IMG/VR virus record: IMGVR_UViG_3300046542_000248
Coordinates: 182,902-246,901 of that record
DNA length: 64,000 bases
Reading direction: 5' to 3' (one strand)
Of this stretch, positions 13,169 through 62,301 are shown piece after piece. A model generated the notes under the pieces. That model saw nothing but the letters and a program-made list of their open reading frames with translations. It was not told the origin of the DNA and searched no databases. Within the stretch, counting starts at the first letter, position 1. Each line of letters starts with the position of its first letter. The translations under genes and the position numbers were made by a program.

Positions 13169-14401
13169 TTAAAGTTTTTCTAGAGTGTCCAGAGTGTTAT
13201 TCACACTTCTTAGGAATACTCCGTTCAAGCTAATGAAGTAAGCAATGAAATCATTGATTTCTTTTGTAATAACCGAAAGTGCTCTATAGGATTTTCTATC
13301 CATCATACCAGCTTCAACAACAGCTTTTTCAGAATCTTTCAACCCGTTCAAAGCATCATTGGATAAACCATCCAATAGTTGTCTATTCTTCTCAACAACG
13401 TCTGTCAGATGTTTTAAACCATTAAGAATTTCTTGAGTGGTGAGTTCTTGTGAACCATTTAAGCGTTTCCATTTATCACCATCTTCTTCTTTTTCAAATG
13501 TAGCTAAAGAACCAACTACACCTGATAGCTTTTTACCAATATCATCTTTCCGATTTTCCCCAGAAATAAATTGTTCAAGAGCGAATTTTACATTCTCATT
13601 GAAGTCCTCATCACTTTTATCAAGTTTATTAAGTCCTTCAATTCCGTCGAATGCATCTTGTTTACGAACTACGTTGTGTAGAACTTTATCTTGAATAGTT
13701 TTCACTTTATTGATATATACTTCCATCGTTTCCATCTTTGCAAATGTTAACGGTATTCTAATAGTTCTAGCTTGTTGCTTTGTAAACTTAGCATCGTCTT
13801 CTTCTCTTTTCTTACGTTTTGCTTCAGCCGCAGCCTCTTTCTTTTCTTTCTCAAGTTGAGCCAGCTTTTCTTGTTCTTCTTTTAACTGCTTTAGCTTTGC
13901 TTCGTATTCTGCATTTTCTTTATCTTTTAATTCTTTCATTTGATCTTTTAATTTATCCAGATTGGCTGCAACAGCATCAGTCATTGCAGTAAGTTTTTTC
14001 TCGGTTTGTGCATGAATTTCATCAGCTTTAACACCTTTAAATTCCGACTTCTTCATTCCTTCAGGTTGAGCCAACTTCTTTTCCACATCTTGTATTCTAA
14101 CTTTAGTATCTTTTACATTTTTGGAAAACTTGGATCGGATAAAGTTAACGAAGAGTCTAATTTTATCTCCAATCCATTTAAAGAATTTCTTAATGCCTTC
14201 GATAAACTTATTATCATCCGATTCTGTCAAATAAGTGCCAGACCAAGCTTCGAATAAGATATTATCGGTTGTAGTTGATTCATACATCAATGACTCTAGA
14301 GTCACAGGCTCAGGCATAACAAGTTCTGGGACATTTCCAGAACTAATTTCACCCATATTATATCCTTCCATAATGTAACGCAGTTTTGTTGAAATTTCCA
14401 T
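13169..14401 (-). CDS. internal head protein, KLxLIxEG family
   Basis: MEISTKLRYIMEG; repeated ES/EA sites; amphipathic FFKWIGDKIRLFVNFIRSKF. Confidence 0.7.
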   Translation of the reverse strand: MEISTKLRYIMEGYNMGEISSGNVPELVMPEPVTLESLMYESTTTDNILFEAWSGTYLTESDDNKFIEGIKKFFKWIGDKIRLFVNFIRSKFSKNVKDTKVRIQDVEKKLAQPEGMKKSEFKGVKADEIHAQTEKKLTAMTDAVAANLDKLKDQMKELKDKENAEYEAKLKQLKEEQEKLAQLEKEKKEAAAEAKRKKREEDDAKFTKQQARTIRIPLTFAKMETMEVYINKVKTIQDKVLHNVVRKQDAFDGIEGLNKLDKSDEDFNENVKFALEQFISGENRKDDIGKKLSGVVGSLATFEKEEDGDKWKRLNGSQELTTQEILNGLKHLTDVVEKNRQLLDGLSNDALNGLKDSEKAVVEAGMMDRKSYRALSVITKEINDFIAYFISLNGVFLRSVNNTLDTLEKL

Positions 14402-31235: not shown

Positions 31236-32273
31236 TTAGACATTTGAATCGCTCCTTTTTAATAAAAGTTCTTTATTGATTTTATCTTGATCATGATTAA
31301 GCATTCGACATTGATCATCATACCATTGCTGATCTTTACCGAGTTCAAAGAAATTATACTCAATATAAACAAAGTTATTAACAGATTCTTTATTAAGTAT
31401 TTCTCTAAGAGTATCTAAATCCATCATATAATAACTATCTTCCCATTGTAAAGCACCATTAATTACATGATCTACATGAAGAGATGAATTATCATCTGTA
31501 ATGAATGAAGAAATCATAATAGAACGAATCTTATTAGAATTATACCTGGCTGACATTGCATTAGCCCTATAGAAAGCTGGGATAGAAGCAGAGAATAGAG
31601 GCTCAAAGAATTTGACACTATCAGCAAGATGATAGTATTGCACATTCATAAACAATTCTCTACCGTACCAATCTGCCTTCTGAATACTTGTAGGAATTGG
31701 TATTGTCATAACACCCGTATTTAAACGAGTATTCTTAATTTGTCTAGCTCTTTCAACCATTTTATGCGTTGTATTGAAATAGTCTGGAAGATTGTGAAGA
31801 ATTTCACCAATACGATTAAATACAGCAGCATTGTTTTCTGTATCAGGGTTAATAACTCCTACATTGCTACCATTTTCTCCGAATAGGAATAGATATGCTA
31901 GTAGTTGTCCATAAGTCAATTCCCTATGATGCTGTCTTGGAAGTCGTACAACGTGATTAAGATTATTAAACGCAGTGTACAGAATTGCAAAAGTTCCTTT
32001 ATTGATAGGAAAATGTTCTGTTGGAGTTGCACCGCCGCCCATAGTTTCAATACGAGCAACTTCTCTGAAATAATACCAGGGATTGGTTGTACATTCCAAG
32101 ATAATCTTTTGCTTCTGTACAGATGTGAGGTTTGGATCATATGGATCTACATCTTGTAAATCATTATTATGCAGATGTAACATATGCGGAACTGTTAAAC
32201 CGTGTTCCTTAAATAATTTGTACAGAGCAAGGAATGAAATGTTCTTAGTATTGTGATGATACCAATAACTCAT
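31236..32273 (-). CDS. degenerate terminase-large-subunit ATPase paralog (no nuclease domain)
   Basis: TKNISFL...VDPYDP...EC..NPWYYFREVARI, typical of jumbo-phage TerL N termini; PRQHHRELT in place of PRQxGKT; 345 aa only. Confidence 0.7.
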   Translation of the reverse strand: MSYWYHHNTKNISFLALYKLFKEHGLTVPHMLHLHNNDLQDVDPYDPNLTSVQKQKIILECTTNPWYYFREVARIETMGGGATPTEHFPINKGTFAILYTAFNNLNHVVRLPRQHHRELTYGQLLAYLFLFGENGSNVGVINPDTENNAAVFNRIGEILHNLPDYFNTTHKMVERARQIKNTRLNTGVMTIPIPTSIQKADWYGRELFMNVQYYHLADSVKFFEPLFSASIPAFYRANAMSARYNSNKIRSIMISSFITDDNSSLHVDHVINGALQWEDSYYMMDLDTLREILNKESVNNFVYIEYNFFELGKDQQWYDDQCRMLNHDQDKINKELLLKRSDSNV

Positions 32274-33734: not shown

Positions 33735-33845
33735 AACAAAAAGCCGACCATCGAGGTCGGCTTTTCTGTTTTTCACAATCTCCTTCTAGATAGAAAGGAT
33801 CACCTCCGCGCCGAAGCGCATCAAAATGATTTGTGAAGATATATC
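33735..33845 (-). ncRNA. candidate structured small RNA or 3'-UTR element
   Basis: AACA-N6-TG at 33845-33856; closing stem; GCGC-UUCG-GCGC hairpin; GGAGGUGAUCC; second hairpin; terminator. Confidence 0.5.
33738..33765. terminator. bidirectional terminator
   Basis: aaaagccgacc/ggtcggctttt. Confidence 0.85.
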
Positions 33846-33855
33846 AATTAACTGT

Positions 33856-35145
33856 TTATTTTTTTGTGGGTAATACTATTTTACCTGCCATATCCATAGT
33901 GATCTGGCTAAGACCATCTAGGAACTTCCATGCTATGGAATTATGAACTACTGTAAAGTCTGTTGCTAATTTAAACATGTAGTTGTAAAGCTTGATAAGA
34001 CTATCCAACTTAGATTTATAATCAGCAAGTACTCGTTGCTCAGCATTTACAATATTCCACTTATTAGCTTTCTTAGCATTATCAATTCTATCCAAACTTA
34101 ATTGAAGTTCTTTAGTGATCATTTGCTCATAAAGTTTAAGTTTAGCTGGAATAACCTTATCAGCATAATCAATAATTTTTTCTTGCTGCCTTTCCATATG
34201 CTTTGCTTTCTCATATAGATAATCCATATCATCTTTGGGCCATACGATCACTTTCTTATTCGGACCATAGAGATTTTCATAGATAGATTCTTCACTATAC
34301 GGAGTTTTGAATACTTCCGCAAAGATAGAATCAAGGAATCGCTTCTCATTATCAATGATAGAATCGGTGAACATTACTACCTTAGAATCAGTTTGAGTTA
34401 AACCAATGATTCTTTGGATACGATCATCAAAGATATCAAATACCTTTTCGATCCCTTTAGCAAAGAAATCATAATCAGGTTTATCATACACATGAGAATG
34501 AACTGTCATCTCATAATTGATACTCTTCATATCAACTAACTTTGCAAGCTCTGGGTACTTCTCTTTCCATTCCGATTTAGCTTCATCAGCTTTACTTTTC
34601 TTACGAGAAAACTTACTCTTTAAGAAAGCAATAAACTGAAGTACTTTCTCTTTAATCCATTTAAAGAACCTACTGATATAAGATAAGAATCCACCATTAG
34701 AACTCTCAGTCAAAATATCCATAACAGATTCTGTAACATAATCGTTATTAATTAAAAGAAAATCAGGCAATGAGGATTCATGCAACTTATGTAATTCTTC
34801 CTCAAGTTCTGCAATTCTTTCCTTATTAGCCTCAGCACCAGATCTTTTCAGTAAGAAAATCTTATGACTAATTTCTTTCTTTTGCTGTGAAGTTGATGGT
34901 GGAGTTGAAGATACAATCTCATCATAACGCTTTTGAAGTTCCTCAATCTGTTTAGCAATCTCATCACTATGACCATGAAGTTGCTGCTGTCTAAGTTTGC
35001 CGATTCTAGTTTTAATTTGCTGCTTTTCATGTGTTACACGATTCTCATCTTTCCATTGAGGTAATGGGAAGTTAAATGATGATTCGTTTATTTCCTGAAA
35101 AGAATATCCTTCTTGAATAAGAAGTAGTTTAGAAGTTACATCCAT
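33856..35145 (-). CDS. internal head protein, KLxLIQEG family
   Basis: MDVTSKLLLIQEG; LTES; FFKWIKEKVLQF; start moved to follow SD ggaggg. Confidence 0.75.
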   Translation of the reverse strand: MDVTSKLLLIQEGYSFQEINESSFNFPLPQWKDENRVTHEKQQIKTRIGKLRQQQLHGHSDEIAKQIEELQKRYDEIVSSTPPSTSQQKKEISHKIFLLKRSGAEANKERIAELEEELHKLHESSLPDFLLINNDYVTESVMDILTESSNGGFLSYISRFFKWIKEKVLQFIAFLKSKFSRKKSKADEAKSEWKEKYPELAKLVDMKSINYEMTVHSHVYDKPDYDFFAKGIEKVFDIFDDRIQRIIGLTQTDSKVVMFTDSIIDNEKRFLDSIFAEVFKTPYSEESIYENLYGPNKKVIVWPKDDMDYLYEKAKHMERQQEKIIDYADKVIPAKLKLYEQMITKELQLSLDRIDNAKKANKWNIVNAEQRVLADYKSKLDSLIKLYNYMFKLATDFTVVHNSIAWKFLDGLSQITMDMAGKIVLPTKK

Positions 35146-35235
35146 TGCTATCCCTCCATAATTGATTATTCTAATTATAAGTTTTACATGCAAAAAGCCA
35201 TCTACATTTTTAGTAGATGACCTCTATTATGCAGA

Positions 35236-36298
35236 TTAAAGATTTTTACCTTTTTCAACGATTTTCGTATACTCAGCGTTAGCAATCTGTTCAGTCTTCG
35301 AAAGAAGACTCTCAGTGATGCTACCATGAGTTACAATGAAATCGTTAGTAATTTTGATCAGGTAGTTGAAAGATTTAACTACGAAACTTAATTTACGTTT
35401 CATTGTCATGATCTCTTTACCTGCTTGAGTTGCAGCGTCATGATCTTGAGAACTATTTGCTTTGTTCAATTTCTCTGTAGCTAGAGCAATTTGAGTATCA
35501 AATGCTCTCTTGTAATGACCAAGTTCTTCTTTGAGGGTTTTCTCTGAGAAATTAATGATACGATTACTTTGATCTTGCATATGACGCAATTTTGCTACCA
35601 ATTTAGTCATATCGAAAACGGTAACGGTTTCTTTCTTAGCGTCACCGTATACCAGTTTAATCAAATTCTCTTTACTATAATCAATACCAAGAGCAGACTT
35701 GAAAAGAGAATCAAGGAATTTCTGCTCATTATTAATTGCAGTGTCGTTGATTCCTTTTGCGCTGTCATTAGGAGTAGACACAATTGAAGATACGCTGTCT
35801 TTAACTGTGCTGTAAACTTTTCCTAAACCAATTTGCCAAGAAATCTACATTGTCTTTATCGTATACATTAGTATACGTTTCAACTTCATAGTCAGTAACC
35901 GATTTGCCAACAGTTGCTTTGAATTTCGGACTTTCAATTATTGCTACTTGCTCTTTAACTTTCTCTTCAACTTTATCGGTTCTAGTTTTAGTAGTACCGC
36001 CAGTGAATTTACTTTTAACGAACTTAACGAATTGTGCAATTTTATCAGCAATCCATTGGAATAGCTTAGCTACTGTAGCAAGGAATCCTTTGCTTTGAGC
36101 AGCACCATCACTCTCAGTGAGAGAACCGATTGTTAAATCAGCCATAAAGTTAATATCAGTTGAAACGCTCTCAATGAATAGTGAGAATTCATCACCAGCA
36201 GCTTCTGTTACTAGCTCTGTGAAACTTTTAGCACCAGAATTGATTTCTCCGATAGAGAAACCTTCCTGAATAAGTTGTAGTTTTTTTGCAATTTCCAT
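35236..36298 (-). pseudogene. KLxLIQEG family head protein interrupted by a +1 frameshift near 35830
   Basis: removing one base joins MEIAKKLQLIQEG...DFLAN to GLGKVYSTVKDS...INNEQKFLDS, collinear with neighbours. Confidence 0.75.
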
Positions 36299-36344
36299 GA
36301 CGTTTCCGCCTCCCATTATAATATTGTACACTAATTAGAAGTTG

Positions 36345-37367
36345 TTAAACGTTAACTGTAACTACAATATCACTGCGCAGTTTATCGGTCACAGTTTTAT
36401 GAGCCATCATAAATTCATTTGCAAGTTTAAATGTGTATTTGTATAGCTTAGAAATTTGCTGCACTTTAACTCTATTTACTTCCATCAAGTAATTTTGTTT
36501 GGCAATGGTTTGAGCATCCATATTCTTTGCCAGTATTTCAGTCTCATGATCCTGTATTTCAGGATTATTGATTCTATTAATCTTTTCCTCAGCTCTTGCA
36601 ATATGTATATTCAGAGCTGCTTCATAGTTTGAAAAATCTTTAGATATAGTTGATTTAACGAAATTAACAATCGCCCACTCTTGTGATTCCAAATGACTCA
36701 ATCTTGTATACAGAGTAAGTAGATTAGCACTGGAAGCATTAACCTTTTTGATAGGTCCATATATAATATCAAATATAGCGTTATTGCTATAATTAACATC
36801 AAAGCAGTCATTAAAGATAGTATTCATGAATTTTTGTTCATTATCAATATCAGGATTAACTGTAGTTGGATCTCCTGATGAATCGTGAAGTACTTCTAGA
36901 GCACGTTTATTCAGTACTTCAAAAACTATATTCACACCATTTCCAAAGTAGTCTTCTTTTTCATAATCAAATACATTACTGTATACATCAATTTGCTTTA
37001 CACCTTGAGCTTCAAACTTTATTCTAAACTCAGGCATCTGTATTCTATCAATAGATTCTTTGATAGACTTATTAATCTTAGTAGTATCAATTCTATTAGA
37101 TGAAAACTTATGTGTAATAAATTTAATAAATTGTGATATCTTTTCTCTAATCCAAGCAAGGAATTTTTTAATCTGTACCAAGATTCCAGTACCTGAACTT
37201 TCATAGATCATCATTACTGACATACTGTCAATATCGGAGATAACACCTTCAGTGAATAGTGATAGGCTATCGCTATTAATTGATTCAAATATTGATACTT
37301 TGCCAGCATTAATATCTTCAATAGAATTACCTTCTTGAATTAAACGTAGTTTTCTTGAAATATCCAT
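36345..37367 (-). CDS. internal head protein, KLxLIQEG family
   Basis: MDISRKLRLIQEG; YES; FLAWIREKISQF. Confidence 0.75.
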   Translation of the reverse strand: MDISRKLRLIQEGNSIEDINAGKVSIFESINSDSLSLFTEGVISDIDSMSVMMIYESSGTGILVQIKKFLAWIREKISQFIKFITHKFSSNRIDTTKINKSIKESIDRIQMPEFRIKFEAQGVKQIDVYSNVFDYEKEDYFGNGVNIVFEVLNKRALEVLHDSSGDPTTVNPDIDNEQKFMNTIFNDCFDVNYSNNAIFDIIYGPIKKVNASSANLLTLYTRLSHLESQEWAIVNFVKSTISKDFSNYEAALNIHIARAEEKINRINNPEIQDHETEILAKNMDAQTIAKQNYLMEVNRVKVQQISKLYKYTFKLANEFMMAHKTVTDKLRSDIVVTVNV

Positions 37368-37450
37368 ATTTGTACCTCCGTTATTATAATTTTCTATCAT
37401 AGGTTTCATAAATAAGATCATCTACCGCGAAGTAGATGATCTCTTAATTT

Positions 37451-38329
37451 TTACATATACTTCTCAATCATCGTTAATTTATTAATATGTGCATTCACGT
37501 ATGAAAGAATCTCTGGATATGTGTGTAACATTGTTTCACACAGAAGTTGAATGATCTTGAAACTGTCATCAGCCATTGCACTAAGATTCTCTATTTGAGT
37601 TTCGTAGTAACCTAATGCCTGATGCATATCTTTCCATAGATCATAGAATGAATCAGTGAATATGATAATATTTTGAATTTGCTCTTTGGACTGTATCCGA
37701 ACAGCGGCTGATTTATTAAGCGATAAATCAAGTGCATTCGGTGTGACATTTTTATCATAGGAAATTGGCGCTCCATTGAGTACCTTTCTCCAGATAATAC
37801 TTTGCATTCCGTTAACATCAGTACTGGATGTAATTTCGGAATTATAACCAGCACCAGTATACGCATAATCAACGTAATCAGCATTGACATCTTCGAATTT
37901 ACCAACCAAATTTTTTAGAACTGTCATTGCAGCATTTGGATCATTGACAATCATATCAAAATTGTCTGGAACCATAAATGGATGAAATTCTTTACTCATT
38001 ATCTTTTTCAAACTGGATGTAGTTTGTATGTGAGTTTCATGTTTCTTCTTTTGAAACATGTGCATTATGAAAGTTTTAAATTGACGAATCTTTTCGAGTA
38101 TCCAATTAATGAACTTTCTAAGAACGCTGGTTTTATCGCCATCACTCTCTTTGAGTATATTCATACTCATTTGAGAAACGTAGCTAAAATCAACAGCGAC
38201 ACTTTCTATGAATAATTGAAGTTCATCAGCGGATTCATTGATACTGGAGAATGATTTAGCTTCTCCTGAATTGATTTCTCCGATTGAGAAACCTTCTTGA
38301 ATAAGACGAAGTTTCGATGTTACGCTCAT
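37451..38329 (-). CDS. internal head protein, KLxLIQEG family
   Basis: MSVTSKLRLIQEG; LKES; FINWILEKIRQF. Confidence 0.75.
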   Translation of the reverse strand: MSVTSKLRLIQEGFSIGEINSGEAKSFSSINESADELQLFIESVAVDFSYVSQMSMNILKESDGDKTSVLRKFINWILEKIRQFKTFIMHMFQKKKHETHIQTTSSLKKIMSKEFHPFMVPDNFDMIVNDPNAAMTVLKNLVGKFEDVNADYVDYAYTGAGYNSEITSSTDVNGMQSIIWRKVLNGAPISYDKNVTPNALDLSLNKSAAVRIQSKEQIQNIIIFTDSFYDLWKDMHQALGYYETQIENLSAMADDSFKIIQLLCETMLHTYPEILSYVNAHINKLTMIEKYM

Positions 38330-38354
38330 GGTATATAAACCTCCCGAATTATAT

Positions 38355-39227
38355 TTAAGTCATATTTCTATCTAGTGTAACTAAACGTCCTAAATGTGAA
38401 TCAACGTATTTAAGAATTTCTGGAAGTGTATACAAGATAGTCTCACATACAAGCCTTATTGATCTAAAGCTTTCGTCCGAGAGACTTCTTAGTTTTTTCA
38501 ATTGACCTTCGTAATAAGATAAAGATTCATTGATATCTTTCCATAGATCATAAAAATTACCAGCAAACTCAACGATATTTTGAACTTGATATGATGAGTT
38601 AATTTCGACCGATGGCACTCGTTTAAGTGTAATATCTATCGCAGATTTAGTGATGTTATTATCACTTGTAATATTGCGACCAATTATCACTTGACCCCAA
38701 GTAACTTTTCTAAGATCAGAAATACTTTGATACCGAGTCATCTCAGCAGTATCTCCATTATATACAGCATCAAATCTTCTAACCAATGAATCTTCAAATC
38801 TTTCCATTACATCTTTGAGATTTTTAATGGCATCTTTAGGAGAATATACCACATCTTCAAAAGTATCATAAAAAACAAAAGGTGTAAAATTCTTACCTAA
38901 TAGAGATTGTAATTTTGCTAGATGAGTATAAGTTAATTCTTGTTTTTTCTTTCTAAACAAATTCATTAGTAGCATTTTAAATTGACCTATTTTCTGAACG
39001 ATCATATCCAGAATTCTTCTGAAGATAAGATCTTTATTAGGTCGGTTAACAGGTACATCACTCTCTTGTAAGAGAGAATTACTCATCTCAGAAATATACT
39101 CCAAATCAATAAAAAGACTGGAGAAAAGTAAAGAGAAGTCATCTTTTGGAAGTGTAATATGTCCTGTATTTATATCACTTATGGTATATCCTTCTTGGAT
39201 GAGTCGAAGCTTGGATTGTATGTCCAT
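38355..39227 (-). CDS. internal head protein, KLxLIQEG family
   Basis: MDIQSKLRLIQEG; LQES; close paralog of 37451..38329. Confidence 0.75.
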   Translation of the reverse strand: MDIQSKLRLIQEGYTISDINTGHITLPKDDFSLLFSSLFIDLEYISEMSNSLLQESDVPVNRPNKDLIFRRILDMIVQKIGQFKMLLMNLFRKKKQELTYTHLAKLQSLLGKNFTPFVFYDTFEDVVYSPKDAIKNLKDVMERFEDSLVRRFDAVYNGDTAEMTRYQSISDLRKVTWGQVIIGRNITSDNNITKSAIDITLKRVPSVEINSSYQVQNIVEFAGNFYDLWKDINESLSYYEGQLKKLRSLSDESFRSIRLVCETILYTLPEILKYVDSHLGRLVTLDRNMT

Positions 39228-39322: not shown

Positions 39323-39360
39323 GTATAAAATATTATAAAGTGTGTATAAAATATTATAAA
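39323..39360 (+). repeat. 17-bp direct repeat gtataaaatattataaa x2, 21-bp period
   Basis: exact copies at 39323-39339 and 39344-39360. Confidence 0.9.
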
Positions 39361-39373
39361 AGGATGTGTAACT

Positions 39374-40657
39374 ATGAAAGTATTAAATGTTCAAAATTTA
39401 ATTGAAACTCAGGCTAATCTACGGCAGGAGAGAAATCTAAGTCAGTTCGTAAGATTCCTTGATACAAACCCTGTGCCATCGACTTATTACTCTATTAATA
39501 ACCCAGAATCTACCACTGAAATTGGTACTGGGGATGTTATGTCCTATGTGGCTGAAGATTCGCCAGTTCGATATAACAAAATTCTTAATCTACCTTTATT
39601 TTCAGTAAATGCAATCACTGCTACTATTACCTACGATGAAACAACTGGTACTTATACTGAATATGCTGATCAGGCTCAGGTATTGAATCAAACGATTCAG
39701 CCTAACCCTGGTGATGCATTCATTATCGGCTCATTTAATCCTGAAATTATCTTCATGATCACAGCAGTAGGTATCCGTGCTATTAAAGGTAAAGATCATT
39801 ATATCATTGAGTATTCGGTTGTACCTACTTCTCGAATCAAAAGAATCGAGAATCAAGTTACTGATACTTATGAAACAATTTACAGAAATATCGGTACTGA
39901 AGATAAAGCTATCATTAGAAGAGAAGATTATAATCTTCTTGAACAATGTGTAGATTCTTATGGTAAACTTCTTGACCGATACCTTGAGGAGAATTATGAT
40001 GACGATATTGGCTATTTACGAACTCCTGACAATCTATCAGATGATATTTTGGGAATGGGTACTTGTAAATATCTTATAAAGTTCCTTACCGATAATAGAG
40101 TAATCTATTTCGATGAGATTCTTGAAATGATCTTTGCATTTGAAACTCCATTAGCATTTGAACCTAAACACAATCGTAATTATAATAGAACTTTCTTCCT
40201 TCAAAAGTTTATTACTAAAACTATGGAGAAAGATATGATGAGTTATGTATCATTCAGATCTCTTCCTGTAAGTTTATTCAAAGAGATCGAAGATGTCACT
40301 CTATACCAATCTATTGAATTTGATTATTTACCAATTCAATGGGTAGAACCTACTCCAGACCCTGAACTAGAAACGCCTCCTGAAGAGGGAGAATTAGAAC
40401 TTGTATTACCTGAAGCTCCTTATGGTTCTATGCTATTATTAGATTATCTTTATACTAATAGTATCATTGATAAAAACTATGAAGGATTAAGTGGTTTGAA
40501 ACTTGTAGTTGCTAAAGCATACAATGATGAGAAAATTACTGTAGATGAATTTAATACAGCAATTAATGATTATGATGCTACAGACTTCGAACGTTTCTAT
40601 CTTATCCCATATGTATTATTTATTCTTAAAGTAAAGATCAAAGCCCTACAAAAATAA
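39374..40657 (+). CDS. virion structural protein (jumbo-phage neck/connector-like)
   Basis: TYYSIN..ESTT..G...Y...DSP.RYNKI and QPNPGDAF pattern; late promoter. Confidence 0.6.
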   Translation: MKVLNVQNLIETQANLRQERNLSQFVRFLDTNPVPSTYYSINNPESTTEIGTGDVMSYVAEDSPVRYNKILNLPLFSVNAITATITYDETTGTYTEYADQAQVLNQTIQPNPGDAFIIGSFNPEIIFMITAVGIRAIKGKDHYIIEYSVVPTSRIKRIENQVTDTYETIYRNIGTEDKAIIRREDYNLLEQCVDSYGKLLDRYLEENYDDDIGYLRTPDNLSDDILGMGTCKYLIKFLTDNRVIYFDEILEMIFAFETPLAFEPKHNRNYNRTFFLQKFITKTMEKDMMSYVSFRSLPVSLFKEIEDVTLYQSIEFDYLPIQWVEPTPDPELETPPEEGELELVLPEAPYGSMLLLDYLYTNSIIDKNYEGLSGLKLVVAKAYNDEKITVDEFNTAINDYDATDFERFYLIPYVLFILKVKIKALQK

Positions 40658-42912: not shown

Positions 42913-44127
42913 ATGAGCAGCATTTTCGGTTATGATCGTGGCGGAGCACTTAGTTCAACTCAATTGAAATCTCTTGCAACGTATGAAGGAGGTAAGTTCA
43001 GTAAGTTCTTTATTCGTTATCTTGCTGAATCTTATTCTTGGAAATACTTCTCCTGGCCCGAGGTAGAAAGACTTTTGGCAGAAGGTTATATGATCGGATC
43101 TGTATTCGAAGACGGTGCAGATAGTATTAACGAAGGTTATGAAGCTGGTAAAGCGGCTGCTGGTAGATCCAAAGCAACTGCAATCCGCGTTGGTCAACCT
43201 AAGAAAAGTGGAATCTTCTATGCAGTAGATTATGATGCACCTGCATCTGATTACGATGCAATTGAAGCATTCCTTAAAGGGGCACAAGAAGTTCTCGGTG
43301 ATGACTTCTTTGCTGGTGTTTACGGTAAGTATGATGTAATTGAAGAAATGGGTAAACGGAAAGCATGTAAATACTTCTGGCAAACTCTTGCTTGGAGTCG
43401 TGGTAAACTTTCCGAATTTGCTGATATGTATCAATACAAAATTGATACTCCTGCAAACGGAATTAACGTTGACTTCAATGAATGTTTCAATCCTGAGTTC
43501 CTTTGGGGTCAATACAAAGAACCAGTTCCAGTTCCACCTGTTGTAGTGGTACCTCCGAAGATTGTAACTCTTTCGATGTATGATGATGTACCAGTAGATC
43601 ACTGGGCAGCATCGGCTATTGAAAAAGCTTTTAAGAAAAACTTTATGAGTGGCGTTTCGGATAGAAAGTTTGGTCTTAACCAAGAAGTTACTCGTGAACA
43701 ACTTGCGGTAGCTCTTGATAAAGCTGGTCTTTTAGAATCTGATGCTTTTGCTAAAACATCTGCAAGCTTAGTATATAGTGATGTGCCTGAATCTCACTGG
43801 GCAGCATCTGCTATTATGAAAGCTTTTAACAAAAATGTTATGAGTGGTGTTGGTGGTGGTAAGTTTGGTCTGGGTGAAGAACTCACTCGTGAACAATTTA
43901 CTACAGTTCTAGCTAACCTTGGTCTTATTACAATGGGTGAATCCTATTGGAAAATTCCAGATATTTACACAGATGTGCCGTCCGATCACTGGGCAGTTAA
44001 ATCCATCAAAAACGCATACCTTAAAGGTGTGATTGTTGGTGTGGGTGAACACCAGTTCGGTATGGGTGAAGCTGTAATGCGCGAACAACTTGCAAAAGTA
44101 TTCGACAACATGGGTAAACTGGATTAA
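42913..44127 (+). CDS. peptidoglycan hydrolase: GH25-like (DUF1906/Rv2525c-type) domain + three SLH domains
   Basis: FIRYL, FYAVDYD, GVYG, FWQTLAWS; three DVP..HWA..I...G....FG....TREQ repeats. Confidence 0.85.
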   Translation: MSSIFGYDRGGALSSTQLKSLATYEGGKFSKFFIRYLAESYSWKYFSWPEVERLLAEGYMIGSVFEDGADSINEGYEAGKAAAGRSKATAIRVGQPKKSGIFYAVDYDAPASDYDAIEAFLKGAQEVLGDDFFAGVYGKYDVIEEMGKRKACKYFWQTLAWSRGKLSEFADMYQYKIDTPANGINVDFNECFNPEFLWGQYKEPVPVPPVVVVPPKIVTLSMYDDVPVDHWAASAIEKAFKKNFMSGVSDRKFGLNQEVTREQLAVALDKAGLLESDAFAKTSASLVYSDVPESHWAASAIMKAFNKNVMSGVGGGKFGLGEELTREQFTTVLANLGLITMGESYWKIPDIYTDVPSDHWAVKSIKNAYLKGVIVGVGEHQFGMGEAVMREQLAKVFDNMGKLD

Positions 44128-44195: not shown

Positions 44196-44933
44196 TTATT
44201 TGCCGGTCCACATATCCATCATTAATTTTTTAAGGGTAGCTTCAGTCATTACGAAATAACCGTTTTGACCCCAATTTTTACCCCAACTGTTGAGAATTTT
44301 GTAATATGTCGTTGTGCCCTTTGTATAGTAATCTACGATTAATACCTCATGACCACCAAGTTGCTGTTCTCCACGCTTAGGTGTCGGAACAATACCAGTT
44401 GTTGCAACCTTTTGGGATTCAAAGGAATTATAAACGAGCATTCCAAGTGCTACAACATCACCGGCTGCTAAGGCGGCTTTAAGCATTGATGCATCTGCAA
44501 TACGATGATATTCACTAATTTTATATTTAGCAGCTTCAGTTTCAGCAAGAGCTGATGGTTTAGTTGTGAAATCAGTATCATGGTATGGCATCAAACTGTC
44601 GGTACATACACCAAGGGTGTTAAGTACTTTCATACCATCACGAGGATAAGCGCCAGAATCCTGTGATATGGTCCCTTCAATAAGACGCTCATGCCAATAA
44701 ATGTAGGAACGGGATACAACCACAAATGGTACACCAGCTTGTTTTAGACGATACATTTTGAGACTTGCCAATGCATTGCCAGTACATGAACCTTGCTGTC
44801 CCTGATCAAAAACCCAATCAATTAATATCGCATTGTTGGTTTGTTTCGGTAGCAGTGATGTATCACTAACCGTTGCACGATAAAATTTGTCTTTCAAATT
44901 CTGCTTATCTTTCAATACTGGATACTTTTTCAT
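44196..44933 (-). CDS. papain-like C1A cysteine peptidase
   Basis: DQGQQGSC, GGHEV, LNSWGKNWGQNGYF. Confidence 0.92.
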   Translation of the reverse strand: MKKYPVLKDKQNLKDKFYRATVSDTSLLPKQTNNAILIDWVFDQGQQGSCTGNALASLKMYRLKQAGVPFVVVSRSYIYWHERLIEGTISQDSGAYPRDGMKVLNTLGVCTDSLMPYHDTDFTTKPSALAETEAAKYKISEYHRIADASMLKAALAAGDVVALGMLVYNSFESQKVATTGIVPTPKRGEQQLGGHEVLIVDYYTKGTTTYYKILNSWGKNWGQNGYFVMTEATLKKLMMDMWTGK

Positions 44934-56555: not shown

Positions 56556-57680
56556 ATGGATATTAAAGAAAAGTTAAAGTATATACAAGAAGGACACTCC
56601 TTCAGCGAAATCGTTTCGGATAATTTCACTCCACTTAATCAAGTATTGAAAGAATCTCATGAGCTATTCATGGAATCTTTTATGGCTGATGCTAAATACA
56701 TTATCGAGATGGGCGAAGATCTCAAATCTAAAGCTACATTCTTTGATCATGTTAAAAATGTATTGAAATGGTTACGTGATAAAGTAGTTCAGTTCATTAA
56801 CTTTATACGTCAAAAGCTATTCTCTTCAGGTAAAGGTACTAAACAAACTGTTAAGAATGTGAAAGATACTGCTGCTAAGATGGAGATCATTGGTCGTAAA
56901 CCATCAAAACGTATTAATCCTGAAGATGAGCCAGATACATATAGTGATAATTCTGAAGATCATGGGATTCTTCATAAAGATGGAACTCTTCACTATAATC
57001 CAGAAAATCATGAGATTACTATATTCTCTAAAGTTCTGGATACTGATAACTTCTTCGATTCTGGATACAAGAGGATATATAATACTCTTCATGAGTATAT
57101 TTCCAAACTGGAGCAGAATCCAAGTAATCATGATCAAATAATTTCTGTAGATGATGTGATTAATACAAAACCTTTTCTCAATAAGGTATTCAAAGAATCA
57201 CTCTCAGTTAATTATGATAAACTAGAAATCTTTAAAAAGATTTATGGTGATCTTATCACTAAACCTATTACAGTTCGTGAGCTAACACTCTTAGCTGATA
57301 AGCTGTATAGTATGGATGAAGAATCTACTGTATTTGCTAATTGGATACAGAAATCTTTACCCAGAGCATTGGATGATGTTGAAAGACACTTTACTAGAAA
57401 TATGCAACTGATTAAAGATAAACTTGAAGTCGGCTCATCTAAAAATGTTCAAGCTGATACTGAGATGGTTAATAATCTTAATGATGCATTAGCTAAAGTT
57501 ATTAAGCTTATGAATATGCAAATGTCGGTTATTCAAATATTTGCCCAAATGCACGTTGAAGTATTTGTGCATCTTAAGGGTGAGATTGAACATTATGACT
57601 GGGTATTGAATCCATCTAATCAAGATTACGATCAGGATGACTTTAATAGCTATGATAATCATGACGGGTTAATTCATTAG
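56556..57680 (+). CDS. internal head protein, KLxxIQEG family
   Basis: MDIKEKLKYIQEG; LKES; VLKWLRDKVVQFINF. Confidence 0.72.
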   Translation: MDIKEKLKYIQEGHSFSEIVSDNFTPLNQVLKESHELFMESFMADAKYIIEMGEDLKSKATFFDHVKNVLKWLRDKVVQFINFIRQKLFSSGKGTKQTVKNVKDTAAKMEIIGRKPSKRINPEDEPDTYSDNSEDHGILHKDGTLHYNPENHEITIFSKVLDTDNFFDSGYKRIYNTLHEYISKLEQNPSNHDQIISVDDVINTKPFLNKVFKESLSVNYDKLEIFKKIYGDLITKPITVRELTLLADKLYSMDEESTVFANWIQKSLPRALDDVERHFTRNMQLIKDKLEVGSSKNVQADTEMVNNLNDALAKVIKLMNMQMSVIQIFAQMHVEVFVHLKGEIEHYDWVLNPSNQDYDQDDFNSYDNHDGLIH

Positions 57681-58920: not shown

Positions 58921-60090
58921 ATGTTTAAAGATCTTTTTGAAAGTTCCACAGGTGCAAGCGCTGGTACTCTGCAACTTGAGTCTGCATTTGATTCCGCTGA
59001 ATTCTCTCTTTACCTGAACGAAACTGATTCCACAATTAATGGATTGGTTGATTCCTACCGCGGCGTAATGACAGAAGCTCTTACTGAGAGCGCTGGCATT
59101 ATGAACGAAAGCGTTAACCTTGTTCTTGAACAAGCTAACGAGCATGTTGGTAACAAAATCGTAGCAGCTTTGAAAAAGCTGTGGAACTGGATCGTTAAGA
59201 TCGTTGATAGCTCTATCAACTTCGTAATGACTCTAGTAACAAGCAACAAAAAATTCATCGAAAAGATCAAACCGGAAGTTGCTAAAAAGAACCTTTCCGC
59301 TGAAGATCTTGCAAAAATCACGATGACTTCGTATAACTACAAGCCACAAGCTATCAGCACTGAAAAAGTGACGACTGTATTGGGTGAAGTTGATGCTGAA
59401 GCTCGTGCTGATTACAGCGCAGCAAACAAAGAAAAGCTTGACAAAGTTGTAGAAACTTACAACGAAAACAAACGTAAATCTGCTGGTTGGGAAAAAATCT
59501 CCCTGGCAAACCGTTTGACAAACGTTAGCATGCATGAGGTACAAGACTGGGCACGTTATAAAGACGAGCTTCGTGTATCTCTTCAAGGCGGCGAGAAGAA
59601 AACTACGAAGACTTTCTCCATGGATTTCTTCAAAGTTATCGAAACTTATTCCCAAAATGCCGAAGCAATCAAAGGCATTATGTCCAAATCCAAAGAAGAT
59701 TTCAAGAAAACCATCGACCACATCATCCAAAAAGCTGGATATGCTAAGGCCGAAGGTAAAGGCGAAGGTGCTGATGCTAAAGCTGCATCCGGTCGCGTAG
59801 CTTTCTTGAACTACTTGCGTGCAAGAACTGCTGCTACAGCAGATGCGTTTGCAGAATTGATGAGCATGAAGCTCTCCATTCTTAAACGTGAAGTAGGCGA
59901 AGCTCGTTCATTCTGTATGCATGCGGCTCGCTACAATCCGAAAAAAGCAGAAGGCGCTGCATCCGTGAAAAACGAATCCGCCGCTGTTATTCCTTTCGAT
60001 CCATTATTCGAAGATGCTGAAGAAGTAACTGAAGCTGGTTCGCTTACTGAAGGTGCACAAGGCGGCGCTGCTGCTTCTGTAACTTTCTAA
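58921..60090 (+). CDS. abundant internal head protein (MFKDLFES N terminus)
   Basis: strong SD taaggagg, own promoter and terminator, high-expression-type codons, ES sites at both ends, LWNWIVKIV helix. Confidence 0.65.
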   Translation: MFKDLFESSTGASAGTLQLESAFDSAEFSLYLNETDSTINGLVDSYRGVMTEALTESAGIMNESVNLVLEQANEHVGNKIVAALKKLWNWIVKIVDSSINFVMTLVTSNKKFIEKIKPEVAKKNLSAEDLAKITMTSYNYKPQAISTEKVTTVLGEVDAEARADYSAANKEKLDKVVETYNENKRKSAGWEKISLANRLTNVSMHEVQDWARYKDELRVSLQGGEKKTTKTFSMDFFKVIETYSQNAEAIKGIMSKSKEDFKKTIDHIIQKAGYAKAEGKGEGADAKAASGRVAFLNYLRARTAATADAFAELMSMKLSILKREVGEARSFCMHAARYNPKKAEGAASVKNESAAVIPFDPLFEDAEEVTEAGSLTEGAQGGAAASVTF

Positions 60091-60250: not shown

Positions 60251-60583
60251 ATGAACACACAGCAAAAGCTAAAGTTAATAATGGAAGGTGCTATTCTCAA
60301 TGAAGGCGATGTTATTCAGTTTGGCGATCATCATTTGAGAGAAAGAAGATATCAAGAGGAATTAGATAGACTTCAAACCGAGTTCAATAGATTTATTGAT
60401 GACTTGGCACAAACTATTGCTTATCTCAGCAGAAAGAAAGAAGATGGTTCATTATCCAATGATGAATATCTTGCTAAGATGGGTGAACTTGAATCTCGAC
60501 GAGCATTGATGATTACTTATAATAGTAAGATTAATCATCTTAAGCATGAGATACAAACGATGCAGCAAAGTCGAGGGCATTAA
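60251..60583 (+). CDS. small tagged coiled-coil protein 1
   Basis: MNTQQKLKLIMEGAILNEGDVI. Confidence 0.75.
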   Translation: MNTQQKLKLIMEGAILNEGDVIQFGDHHLRERRYQEELDRLQTEFNRFIDDLAQTIAYLSRKKEDGSLSNDEYLAKMGELESRRALMITYNSKINHLKHEIQTMQQSRGH

Positions 60584-61332: not shown

Positions 61333-62301
61333 ATGAAGGGTGGAATTATCTTGAGTATCTTCTCTAAAATTGATACAGGATTGTATATGGACAAGGATAT
61401 TTCTGAAGAAATCACGACCATGTTAGAATCTATAACCAGCACCGATGCACTTATTAATGCATACATGGTAGAAAGTTCTACTATTATTAATGAGGGTGCC
61501 ATTACCGACAGCATTCAAGCTGTTATTGCTAAGCTTATTAGCTTTATCAGGGGATTGTATGAGAAATTTATTTCTCTATTCTTGACCCAATCAGATTATA
61601 TCAAGTATATCCTTGATAAACATTCTGCAAGATTGCATGAATTAACTGATGCAGAATTGAAGACTATTGTATATCAATACACTCAATTCAATATCAGTAA
61701 AGATCTTCCAATATTTGGATATATTGACAATGTGCAAAAGTACATTGATAAACTATCCTCTTTCAAAATTAGCTTCTCAGATATTGAAGACTTTAAAGAT
61801 ATCTTCTCTGAAGAATTATCTGTGATCCGAGGTAAAATTCTTGGTAAAAATGAGAAAATCGCTGAATATGACTTTATTGCTAAAACTCGTGGAATCTTTA
61901 GACCGAATACTGAAGTATTTATGAAGCATATGTCTAAAGCTGATCTGAATAGCATCATTAGCGGGGTTAGTAGTTATAAGAATACTAAATCCATGATCGA
62001 ATCTAATAAAGATTCTCTTACTAGAGAATATAATAAATACTTTAAAGTAATATCCAGTCTAATGAGCGTTAAGTATTCTGATGATGCTCTTGGAGCTACG
62101 ATTACTAATAATAACGGCGATAAAGAGACTGTTGATTTGATTACTGTGAATAAGCATAAGACTTATCAATCATTAATCGTATCTTTCATCTCTCAAATCG
62201 GAGAAGTTTACTCCATTGTATATCGTGAAAAACTTCTTGCTATTAAAGATAAATACGAAATGGAAATGACTATACTATCTCAAGTAATCAGATTGGTGTA
62301 G
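61333..62301 (+). CDS. internal head protein (related family)
   Basis: MLES, MVES, INEG sites, then amphipathic IAKLISFIRGLYEKF. Confidence 0.6.
   Translation: MKGGIILSIFSKIDTGLYMDKDISEEITTMLESITSTDALINAYMVESSTIINEGAITDSIQAVIAKLISFIRGLYEKFISLFLTQSDYIKYILDKHSARLHELTDAELKTIVYQYTQFNISKDLPIFGYIDNVQKYIDKLSSFKISFSDIEDFKDIFSEELSVIRGKILGKNEKIAEYDFIAKTRGIFRPNTEVFMKHMSKADLNSIISGVSSYKNTKSMIESNKDSLTREYNKYFKVISSLMSVKYSDDALGATITNNNGDKETVDLITVNKHKTYQSLIVSFISQIGEVYSIVYREKLLAIKDKYEMEMTILSQVIRLV

What the first reader, a model, noticed from the sequence alone, without database searches (positions are those of the whole stretch)
33856..39227. Five-gene tandem array of head-protein paralogs whose predicted mature N terminus is an amphipathic helix
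After the last ES site each paralog has a F/I-x-x-W-I-x-(E/D)-K-(I/V)-x-Q-F helix (for example FFKWIKEKVLQFIAFLKSKF; the 38355 copy is more diverged). The helix is also present in 13169, 56556, 58921 and 61333. The array reflects recent serial duplication (two sub-pairs). Protease removal of the pro-region would unmask a membrane-seeking helix, suggesting ejection proteins that remodel membrane, as proposed for phiKZ early-infection vesicles, here in a Gram-positive host.
Basis: partly seen in the sequence, partly recalled or inferred. Interest (0 to 1): 0.62.

Follow-up and report, generated by a model that had tools for sequence, protein, structure and literature searches.

The report
Pro-piece-masked internal head protein array

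Summary
The sequence observation holds with corrections. On the minus strand at 33856-39227 lie five tandem paralogs. The second is split by a one-base frameshift. Each has a 13-residue leader, an acidic pro-piece with hydrophobic-x-Glu sites, and a conserved cationic amphipathic helix. The window comes from a 247-kb rhizosphere phage that is distantly AR9/PBS1-like. No Pfam or PHROG family matches, but both AlphaFold models hit AR9 virion protein g096 first, then phiKZ-type virion and internal head proteins. This looks like the AR9-lineage counterpart of phiKZ internal head proteins. The duplication is not recent: paralogs are 20-37% identical and each has a closer homolog in other phages. 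Related contigs keep the array at the same locus, with different copy numbers. The leader also heads a scaffold-like protein and an M48-like protease, so it resembles a T4-type capsid-targeting and first-cleavage signal. A split-chain model (0.85 against controls at 0.00) places the pro-piece on the conserved helix face, which supports masking. In the models the helix is an integral bundle helix, it is not transmembrane, and it carries a near-invariant Lys in its hydrophobic face. The membrane role therefore stays a minority hypothesis. phiKZ, SPN3US and AR9 relatives show the same helix-after-cleavage layout.

The parts
33856..35145 (-). Gene A, 429 aa, C-type paralog with an ~85-residue insertion in the pro-region
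   Evidence: best foreign homolog P0023 at 34% against best in-genome paralog C at 29%
35236..36298 (-). Gene B, C-type paralog split into an N part (35801-36298, 165 aa: leader, pro-piece, helix) and a C part (35236-35781 ORF, whose frame is open back to ~35841)
   Evidence: both halves align to the family
35829..35830 (-). Frameshift site in gene B (one base too many compared with the paralogs' reading frame)
   Evidence: Read directly from the sequence and compared with paralogs A and C. An identical sequence stands in a Logan contig of run X1, depth 17
36345..37367 (-). Gene C, 340 aa, C-type paralog; folded (pLDDT 81, pTM 0.74)
37451..38329 (-). Gene D, 292 aa, D-type paralog; folded (pLDDT 80, pTM 0.74)
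38355..39227 (-). Gene E, 290 aa, D-type paralog with a diverged helix
37329..37367 (-). 13-residue leader of C, ending in I-Q-E followed by G. The equivalent leaders are A 35107-35145, B 36260-36298, D 38291-38329 and E 39189-39227
37200..37328 (-). Acidic pro-piece of C (residues 14-56) with predicted sites after E28, E40 and E56. It is predicted to dock on the helix and on the last C-terminal helix
37104..37172 (-). Conserved cationic amphipathic helix of C (residues 66-88). The equivalents are A 34609-34677, B 36005-36073, D 38054-38122 and E 38955-39023
33738..33766 (.). Bidirectional terminator-like hairpin between the end of the array and the convergent primase gene
39332..39360 (-). 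Promoter-like site upstream of gene E (10 of 12 matches; such sites are not enriched over shuffles)
13169..14401 (-). Dispersed family member, 410 aa, with leader, pro-piece, helix and a coiled-coil-rich C-terminal part
56556..57680 (+). Dispersed C-type family member, 374 aa
58921..60090 (+). Diverged member, 389 aa, with a different leader (MFKDLFES) and the helix retained with its Trp
61333..62301 (+). Most diverged putative member, 322 aa, with a helix lacking Trp
60251..60583 (+). 110-aa protein with the same leader but no helix

Best explanation
The array encodes a divergent, AR9-lineage branch of the jumbo-phage internal head protein superfamily, the kind typified by phiKZ gp92-97 (PF12699).

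Each precursor has four parts:
1. A 12-13-residue leader ending in I-x-E followed by G. The same leader heads 11 ORFs of this genome (a twelfth, in B. of the genome, carries a variant), among them a scaffold-like acidic protein next to the capsid gene and an M48-like protease. It most likely acts as a capsid-targeting signal and first cleavage site.
2. An acidic pro-piece of about 45 residues with two to four further hydrophobic-x-Glu sites for the gp21-type prohead protease.
3. A conserved cationic amphipathic helix followed by a basic tail.
4. An elongated helical bundle, of which that helix is the first long helix.

In the precursor, the acidic pro-helix is predicted to lie on the conserved face of the helix and on the last C-terminal helix. 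Cleavage inside the prohead would remove it and leave a basic mature protein with an exposed conserved groove, held among the packaged DNA.

Inferred steps: the bared face then serves a specific new contact, most likely self-assembly or DNA-associated packing in the head. By analogy with phiKZ gp93, gp95 and gp97, at least some paralogs leave with the DNA. Fast divergence and copy-number change at a fixed locus suggest that the C-terminal parts meet host factors.

Shown here: gene structure, motif statistics, family distribution, predicted folds and the predicted pro-piece contact. Not shown: cleavage, packaging, ejection, or any membrane contact.
For: Gene structure and shared module.

Leader statistics: 11 observed against 0.115 expected, always at the N-terminus. 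It occurs on a scaffold-like protein lying between the protease and the capsid gene, and on a homolog of AR9 g051.

Protease and site motif: an AR9 g114-like protease (E 1.6e-17) and a capsid protein homolog are encoded. The capsid protein N-terminus carries LFE-S, FLE-S and LAE-S.

Fold: models with pLDDT 80-81 and pTM 0.74. The top BFVD hit for both is AR9 virion protein g096 (E 4e-4 and 7e-5, TM up to 0.65), followed by virion and internal head proteins of 201phi2-1, Psa21, Noxifer, Phabio and PhiEaH1. ESM features are nearest to clusters carrying PF12699 (0.93, 218 of 256 shared).

Link to PF12699: AR9 g096 residues 50-134 match PF12699 positions 92-178 (E 0.002, below the cut-off). This is in register with the conserved S-x-E site of phiKZ gp92 and gp96 at about positions 90-92.

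Charge layout in 45 members: pro-piece mean -7.7, next 45 residues mean +5.8.

Masking: the split-chain model scores 0.85 against a best control of 0.00. Runs agree in at least 89% of contacts, and the partner's pLDDT is 71-72. In calibration, 58 of 80 solved complexes and 2 of 110 mismatched pairs reached the mark. Contacts fall on Q65, I66, F69, W72, I73, K76, Q79, F80, F83, I84, K87 and on residues 299-325.

Literature parallels: phiKZ gp93 is cut between E13 and S14, and its pro-region pieces line the capsid (PMC11297242). SPN3US gp53 and gp54 mature N-termini begin GWKETLKDLFER and SLWDDIK (PMC10052503). T4's capsid-targeting sequence concept is described in PMC5694885.

Locus behaviour: in related contigs the array sits at the same position; flanking genes are 55-83% identical and array members 27-43%.
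Against: No significant sequence match exists to PF12699, to any PHROG, to phiKZ gp92-96 (hhalign probability 2.6%) or to AR9 g096.

Fold matches have modest TM-scores (0.3-0.65), and long helical bundles match many unrelated folds.

The ESM recognition value was low.

The models rest on shallow alignments of 9-13 sequences. The complex test used my own alignment and splits one chain in two, so it mostly restates an intramolecular prediction.

Pfam's T4 gp21 model finds nothing in the genome.

No proteomic data exist for this uncultivated phage.
Confidence: 0.65

Rival explanations
1. The mature proteins are ejection proteins whose bared N-terminal helix inserts into or bends the host cytoplasmic membrane. 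They would help to build or reshape an early-infection membrane compartment, or a passage through the envelope, in a Gram-positive host.
For: The helix is strongly amphipathic and cationic and is followed by a Lys-rich tail. It would pass a HeliQuest-type lipid-binding screen (my calculation with the published discriminant, which I recalled from memory).

Trp is near-invariant.

The acidic pro-piece is predicted to cover this face, as in many membrane-active precursors.

Many BAR, F-BAR and I-BAR domains appear among the structural neighbours (Z 7.3-8.8).

In phiKZ, PF12699 paralogs are injected and colocalise with lipid-stained puncta, and their roles are called an open question (bioRxiv 10.1101/2024.03.24.586471).

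The mature fragment of SPN3US gp47 starts with a predicted membrane segment (PMC5694885).
Against: In both models the helix is one of the long helices of the bundle, not a free H0-type helix.

Its hydrophobic arc spans about 180 degrees in a heptad-like pattern. It holds a 95%-conserved Lys, with a 70%-conserved Gln at its edge, which points to a specific protein interface.

There is no transmembrane-grade hydrophobicity: the mean of the highest 19-residue Kyte-Doolittle values is 0.48.

The BAR matches lie in the range the tool itself calls generic for helical bundles.

No chimallin was detected, and PBS1-type phages lack it (bioRxiv 10.1101/2023.02.24.529968).

Comparable amphipathic windows occur in 28 of 246 ORFs of this genome.
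Confidence: 0.2
2. The proteins are inner-surface minor capsid ('cement' or vertex-complex) proteins that remain in the head, like phiKZ gp86 and gp162. The helix and groove serve lattice contacts.
For: The best phage match among solved structures is phiKZ gp86 (8y6v chain G; Z 9.4, 229 residues aligned, rmsd 5.8 A). gp86 is a cleaved helical-bundle protein of the vertex-binding complex (PMC11297242).

phiKZ gp89 and gp162 stay in the head after ejection (bioRxiv 10.1101/2024.03.24.586471).

The neighbouring gene 39374-40657 is a head-tail joining-like virion protein.
Against: Z 9.4 is within the generic range for helical bundles, and hhalign against gp86 finds nothing.

Structural cement proteins are usually single-copy and conserved. 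This locus instead varies in copy number (4-6) and diverges much faster than its flanks.

The strongly basic mature parts fit a position among the DNA better than one on the shell.
Confidence: 0.2
3. The proteins are T4-type internal proteins. They would be basic, DNA-associated cargo whose variable C-terminal parts act against host defences after ejection. The helix and Lys-rich tail would mainly bind and neutralise DNA in the head.
For: The leader resembles a short T4 capsid-targeting sequence, with a hydrophobic-x-Glu cut (PMC5694885).

The mature N-terminal 45 residues carry a mean charge of +5.8 after an acidic piece is removed.

The locus is hypervariable at a fixed position.

phiKZ gp93 is reported to associate with phage DNA (bioRxiv 10.1101/2024.03.24.586471).
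Against: There is no sequence or fold link to T4 internal proteins.

The conserved residues of the helix are hydrophobic (W, F, I) rather than basic only.

No anti-defence domain was recognised.
Confidence: 0.25

Closest known systems
phiKZ-like internal head proteins (PF12699: phiKZ gp92-97, 162, 163; SPN3US gp53/gp54)
   Same: - Tandem paralog array among head genes.
- A 12-13-residue leader ending in x-x-Glu. phiKZ gp93 is cut between E13 and S14 (PMC11297242), and here every leader has E12 followed by G13.
- A long pro-region with several Glu sites.
- A conserved cleavage site followed within about 5-15 residues by an amphipathic helix that opens the mature domain (PMC10052503).
- An elongated helical fold with mutual Foldseek hits.
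   Different: - No significant sequence or profile match.
- The P3 residue at the sites is L/I/F/M as in T4, not S/A/G.
- The pro-piece is much shorter (about 45 against 85-260 residues).
- The helix is far more conserved and more cationic.
- The host is probably a Bacillota species, and the phage lacks a detectable chimallin.
Bacillus phage AR9 g096 (annotated virion protein, 268 aa)
   Same: - Top structural match of both models.
- Same layout: an N-terminal region with L-x-E sites, then a Lys-rich amphipathic helix with a Trp.
- The phage lineage is the nearest characterised one.
   Different: - No significant sequence similarity.
- AR9 g096 lacks the K-L-x-L-I-x-E-G leader and is not part of a five-gene array.
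T4 internal proteins IPI-III and Alt with their capsid-targeting sequence
   Same: - A short shared N-terminal leader on several unrelated head-internal proteins, removed at hydrophobic-x-Glu by a gp21-family protease.
- Basic mature proteins.
- A variable locus (PMC5694885 for the concept).
   Different: - No homology.
- Here the leader is followed by a second, acidic pro-piece.
- The leader also heads the scaffold-like protein itself.
N-BAR domains and other membrane-binding amphipathic helices
   Same: - A cationic amphipathic helix ahead of a long three-helix bundle.
- BAR-family domains among the structural neighbours.
   Different: - Scores lie in the generic range.
- The helix is modelled as part of the bundle.
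- A conserved Lys lies in the hydrophobic face, with a conserved Gln at its edge.
- The dimer was not tested.

Membership tests
PF12699 phiKZ_IP (phiKZ-like internal head proteins) | Match to the Pfam model above its gathering score | tested here: not met
   None of the ten window proteins hit the model at E <= 0.01. phiKZ gp92-96 score 32-253 bits as positive controls.
PF12699 phiKZ_IP (phiKZ-like internal head proteins) | Profile-profile similarity to phiKZ gp92-96 | tested here: not met
   hhalign gives probability 2.6% and E 0.018. The only local match puts the helix on gp93 residues 155-205, just after the S-x-E site.
PF12699 phiKZ_IP (phiKZ-like internal head proteins) | Shared fold with family members | tested here: inconclusive
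   The BFVD hit lists of both models are dominated by jumbo-phage virion and internal head proteins, with E 7e-5 to 1e-2 and TM 0.3-0.65. ESM features score 0.93 to clusters carrying PF12699, but the recognition value was low. AR9 g096 bridges with a sub-threshold PF12699 hit (E 0.002).
PF12699 phiKZ_IP (phiKZ-like internal head proteins) | N-terminal propeptide removed by the prohead protease after Glu | not testable with these tools
   Conserved hydrophobic-x-E-(S/G) sites and a gp21-type protease gene are present. Actual cleavage needs virion mass spectrometry.
PF12699 phiKZ_IP (phiKZ-like internal head proteins) | Tandem paralogs in a head-gene neighbourhood, with copy number varying between phages | tested here: met
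   There are five genes here and four or six in related contigs at the same locus.
T4-type capsid-targeting sequence cargo | Short conserved N-terminal leader shared by several head-internal proteins and ending in a protease site | tested here: met
   The motif stands at the N-terminus of 11 ORFs (plus one variant leader), against 0.115 occurrences expected by chance.
T4-type capsid-targeting sequence cargo | The leader is sufficient to carry a protein into the prohead | not testable with these tools
   This needs reporter fusions in a cultivable relative.
T4-type capsid-targeting sequence cargo | gp21-family prohead protease encoded | tested here: inconclusive
   tblastn with AR9 g114 (annotated prohead core scaffold protein and protease) hits genome 154119-154697 at E 1.6e-17. 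Pfam PF03420 finds nothing.
N-BAR / membrane-binding amphipathic helix | Amphipathic, cationic N-terminal helix | tested here: met
   Hydrophobic moment averages 0.57, hydrophobicity 0.67 and charge about +3, followed by a basic tail.
N-BAR / membrane-binding amphipathic helix | Helix free of the folded domain (an H0-like helix) and a BAR fold match well above background | tested here: not met
   The helix is modelled as a bundle helix that contacts the pro-piece and the C-terminal helix. The BAR matches reach Z 7.3-8.8, which lies in the generic range.
Ejection proteins with a transmembrane segment (SPN3US gp47 type) | Transmembrane-grade hydrophobic segment at the mature N-terminus | tested here: not met
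   The highest 19-residue Kyte-Doolittle mean around the helix averages 0.48 and never exceeds 1.22.

The most novel reading that the evidence does not exclude
The family could be a protease-gated, membrane-active cargo. The acidic pro-piece would keep a cationic amphipathic helix and its groove closed while the protein is in the producing cell and the prohead. After ejection, the bared helices of many copies would bind and bend the cytoplasmic membrane of a Gram-positive host, in the manner of N-BAR proteins, to form or line an early-infection compartment. This would happen in a jumbo-phage lineage that has no chimallin nucleus. The same layout in phiKZ gp93 and gp95, SPN3US gp53 and gp54 and AR9 g096 would make this a general role for internal head protein paralogs.
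Probability: 0.13. Interest if true: 0.8.

Novelty: new variant of a known kind. Interest (0 to 1): 0.5.

Why it matters

This family offers an unusually clear version of their layout. It has a short shared leader, a short acidic pro-piece, and a highly conserved helix with a single invariant Trp that could serve as a built-in fluorescence probe.

The masking model yields simple experiments: compare precursor and mature forms, add the pro-piece in trans, and mutate the Trp and the Lys. These can be done in AR9/PBS1 with Bacillus subtilis, or on phiKZ gp93.

The shared leader also predicts which proteins this phage packages, including an M48-like protease. If it works as in T4, it could serve as a packaging tag for Bacillus jumbo phages.

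None of this is established yet. As it stands, the finding is a well-described new branch of a known kind of protein.

Tried and rejected
Searches and tests that led nowhere:
- DNA and protein searches of the phage collection with the array and with gene C found nothing.
- The word-index protein search found only the protein itself.
- Three scans of IMG/VR viral contigs gave no usable result. In one the alignment was too diverse to search with. In the other two, pattern hits were not confirmed.
- The N-module and full-length profiles found nothing credible in AR9 or phiKZ. One 12-14-bit hit inside phiKZ gene 122 contains stop codons and I treat it as chance.
- Foldseek against the PDB and the ESM Atlas shape search gave nothing meaningful.
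- hhalign against phiKZ gp86 and AR9 g096 was not significant.
- Contigs encoding the homologs P0011 and P0046 were too short to give context.
- Three foreign homologs (P0045, P0046, P0049) looked kinase-like to me by motif, but Pfam found nothing. I make no claim about them.
- The paper by Thomas et al. 2012 on phiKZ proteolysis is not held, so its cleavage data are cited second-hand.

Readings I considered and dropped:
- A programmed +1 frameshift in gene B. The paralog alignment fits a simple extra base better, and no slippery or stimulatory element was evident.
- A secretion signal peptide. The leader has no hydrophobic core.

I inferred burial from the aligned ranges and from the contact list of the split-chain model.

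Full report
**Origin and context.** The window is the last 64 kb of a 246,901-bp IMG/VR virus record that CheckV rates as complete. The same DNA stands in a rhizosphere metagenome run. Its DNA polymerase is only about 27% identical to those of the Bacillus phages AR9, PBS1 and BpSp, with more distant matches in Staphylococcus, Listeria and phiKZ-type phages. It is therefore a distant, uncultivated relative of the AR9/phiKZ-type jumbo phages. An endolysin at 42913-44127 joins a glycoside hydrolase-like domain to S-layer homology domains. Together with the Bacillus kin, this makes a Bacillota-type host plausible. A search with phiKZ chimallin found nothing, and PBS1-type phages are reported to lack chimallin (bioRxiv 10.1101/2023.02.24.529968).

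**The observation.** Five genes lie head to tail on the minus strand: A 33856-35145, B 35236-36298, C 36345-37367, D 37451-38329 and E 38355-39227. They sit between a convergent primase gene and a divergent head-tail joining-like virion gene. A bidirectional terminator-like hairpin closes the unit at 33738-33766.
- Gene B is broken. Its N part ends at a stop at 35801, and the rest continues in another frame. Comparison with A and C places one surplus base near 35829-35830.
- A 118-kb contig from an independent assembly of the likely source run is identical over 34800-36800 at depth 17. The break is therefore not an assembler artefact, although rare intact variants cannot be excluded.
- All five genes share an N-terminal module. 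By profile comparison, A/B/C and D/E share only this module (E 4.7e-26 over about 106 columns). The two AlphaFold models nevertheless have the same order of helices and strands.

**Anatomy of the module.** Every precursor starts with a 13-residue leader of consensus M-x-I-x-x-K-L-x-L-I-Q-E-G.
- The motif K-L-x-(L/Y)-I-x-E-G occurs 11 times in the genome, always at residues 6-13 of an ORF, against 0.115 expected in shuffles. A twelfth ORF, the helix-bearing copy at genome 82504-83562, has a variant.
- Nine leader-bearing ORFs also have the helix. Three do not. These are a 110-aa protein at window 60251-60583, an M48-like zincin that is homologous to AR9 g051, and an acidic low-complexity protein. 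The last lies between the prohead protease homolog (genome 154104-154991) and the major capsid protein gene (156638-158281), the position expected of a scaffold.
- After the leader comes an acidic pro-piece of about 45 residues with two to four sites of the form (L/I/F/M)-x-E followed by S, G or A.
- The capsid protein's own N-terminus carries LFE-S, FLE-S and LAE-S. I therefore read the sites as T4-like cuts after Glu, not as 'ES' sites.

**The helix.** The helix motif starts a median of 12 residues after the last site. Anchored on its Trp, the consensus over 43 family members is I-K-K-F-I-x-W-I-x-E-K-I-x-Q-F-I-K-F-I-K-x-K-F, followed by a Lys-rich tail.
- Over 45 members, the pro-piece has a mean net charge of -7.7 and the 45 residues after the last site have +5.8.
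- The helix has a mean hydrophobic moment of 0.57 and a mean hydrophobicity of 0.67.
- No window reaches transmembrane hydrophobicity.

**Relatives.** Pfam and PHROGs give nothing. An exhaustive profile search with the N-module found 49 proteins, about 39 of them foreign, all carrying the module at their N-terminus. Three longer metagenome contigs carry the family as tandem arrays of four or six genes at exactly the same locus, between the orthologs of the window's flanking genes.
- The flanking genes are 55-83% identical to the window's, the array members only 27-43%.
- The mix of types differs between phages.
- Window paralogs A, C and D each have a closer homolog abroad than at home, and E is about equally close to both.

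The duplications are therefore old, and the locus evolves fast.

**What kind of protein.**
- The models of C and D (pLDDT 81 and 80, pTM 0.74) are elongated helical bundles.
- Against predicted viral structures, both hit AR9 'virion protein' g096 first (E 4e-4 and 7e-5). After it come virion structural and internal head proteins of 201phi2-1, Psa21, Noxifer, Phabio, PhiEaH1 and uncultured myoviruses.
- Language-model features of C are nearest to clusters that carry PF12699.
- AR9 g096 has the same layout. It gives a sub-threshold PF12699 hit (E 0.002) whose start, Glu50, aligns with the model positions of the conserved S-x-E cleavage site of phiKZ gp92 and gp96.
- In phiKZ gp93, gp95 and gp96 an amphipathic helix follows that site.
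- SPN3US gp53 and gp54 start their mature forms with GWKETLKDLFER and SLWDDIK (PMC10052503).
- phiKZ gp93 loses a 13-residue leader by a cut between E13 and S14 (PMC11297242).

I conclude that the window's family is the AR9-lineage counterpart of the phiKZ internal head proteins. A helix right after the maturation site is a shared trait of that superfamily, not a peculiarity of this phage. Formal membership in PF12699 fails at the sequence level.

**The helix and its masking.**
- Structural alignments to three- and four-helix bundles and to phiKZ gp86 (8y6v chain G; Z 9.4, 229 residues aligned, rmsd 5.8 A) start at model residues 31-64 and run to the end. The helix therefore counts as one of the long bundle helices.
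- I split C into residues 1-57 and 58-340. The split-chain model scored 0.85 in two runs and 0.80 in the third, against a best control of 0.00. The runs agreed in at least 89% of their contacts, and the partner's pLDDT was 71-72. In calibration, 58 of 80 solved complexes and 2 of 110 mismatched pairs reached the mark. My own alignment was used, so those counts hold only roughly.
- Pro-piece residues 26-56 touch Q65, I66, F69, W72, I73, K76, Q79, F80, F83, I84 and K87. This is exactly the conserved face. They also touch residues 299-325 of the last helix.
- This supports the idea that the pro-piece covers the helix and that cleavage would bare it. It does not show binding, and it is in essence an intramolecular prediction.

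**Membrane or not.**
BAR-type domains appear among the structural neighbours. In phiKZ the injected paralogs colocalise with lipid-stained puncta. SPN3US gp47 matures to a form with an N-terminal membrane segment (PMC5694885).
- Against it: the helix is modelled inside the bundle. Its hydrophobic arc covers about half the circumference in a heptad-like pattern suited to two protein neighbours. A 95%-conserved Lys sits in that arc and a 70%-conserved Gln at its edge. The BAR scores (Z 7.3-8.8) lie in the range the tool calls generic. Similar windows occur in 28 of 246 ORFs. No paper in the library links internal head protein helices to membrane binding.

I put the membrane role at about 0.2. 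I rank a specific protein or DNA-associated contact in the head, followed by ejection of at least some paralogs, as more likely.

**Verdict.** The sequence observation is real and better than chance. The 'head protein paralog' and 'unmasking' parts of the interpretation gain in-silico support. 'Recent duplication' is refuted, and 'membrane-seeking' remains an untested minority hypothesis. The finding is a new, well-delimited variant of a known kind of protein. Two added points of interest are a T4-like shared leader that predicts the packaged proteome, and a predicted pro-piece gate on the most conserved element of the family.

Noticed in passing
genome 8303-9574 (+), locus L002, outside the window: A 423-aa protein with an HEIGH zinc-protease motif, homologous to AR9 g051 (annotated M48 zincin; tblastn E 2e-17). 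It carries the same 13-residue leader as the head-protein family, which suggests that a metalloprotease is packaged into the head.
   Followed up: partly
genome 155805-156542 (+), locus L003, outside the window: An acidic, low-complexity 245-aa protein with the same leader lies between the prohead protease homolog and the major capsid protein gene. This is the position expected of a scaffold protein.
   Followed up: partly
window 60251-60583 (+): A small 110-aa protein carries the leader, followed directly by a short coiled-coil-like region, and has no amphipathic helix module.
   Followed up: no
window 58921-60090 (+) and 62303-63805 (+): A second leader-like N-terminus (MFKDLFES, MFDDLFVEA) heads a diverged family member and a 500-aa P-loop protein. 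The P-loop protein repeats a similar motif internally (MFGDLLREAS). Several foreign helix-bearing proteins start with a comparable L-L-E-x-F motif.
   Followed up: no
window 42913-44127 (+): The endolysin has an Rv2525c-like glycoside hydrolase domain and two S-layer homology domains. This points to a host with an S-layer anchored to secondary cell-wall polymer.
   Followed up: partly
window 31236-32273 (-) and genome 161269-163431 (+): The window ORF matches only the N-terminal part of large terminases (PHROG E 1e-35). A 720-aa ORF elsewhere in the genome starts with a visibly similar N-terminal sequence. This could be a split or duplicated terminase; AR9's terminase is annotated as joined from five pieces.
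   Followed up: no
window 44196-44933 (-): A papain-family (Peptidase_C1) cysteine protease is encoded among the virion and lysis genes (Pfam E 8.5e-17).
   Followed up: no
loci L012, L013, L015 (metagenome contigs): In related phages the array locus differs in copy number (4 or 6) and holds a third C-terminal type of 407-422 aa. The flanking genes stay 55-83% identical. The locus behaves as a diversification hotspot.
   Followed up: yes
proteins P0045, P0046, P0049 (foreign, 471-521 aa): The helix module is fused to a larger C-terminal domain whose motifs (D-x-K-x-x-N, D-Y-G) reminded me of protein kinases, but Pfam finds nothing. If the resemblance is real, the module carries enzymatic cargo in other phages.
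   Followed up: partly
window 37415-37442: A perfect 11-bp-stem hairpin lies in the C-D intergenic spacer. The scan scored it as terminator-like on the plus strand only.
   Followed up: no
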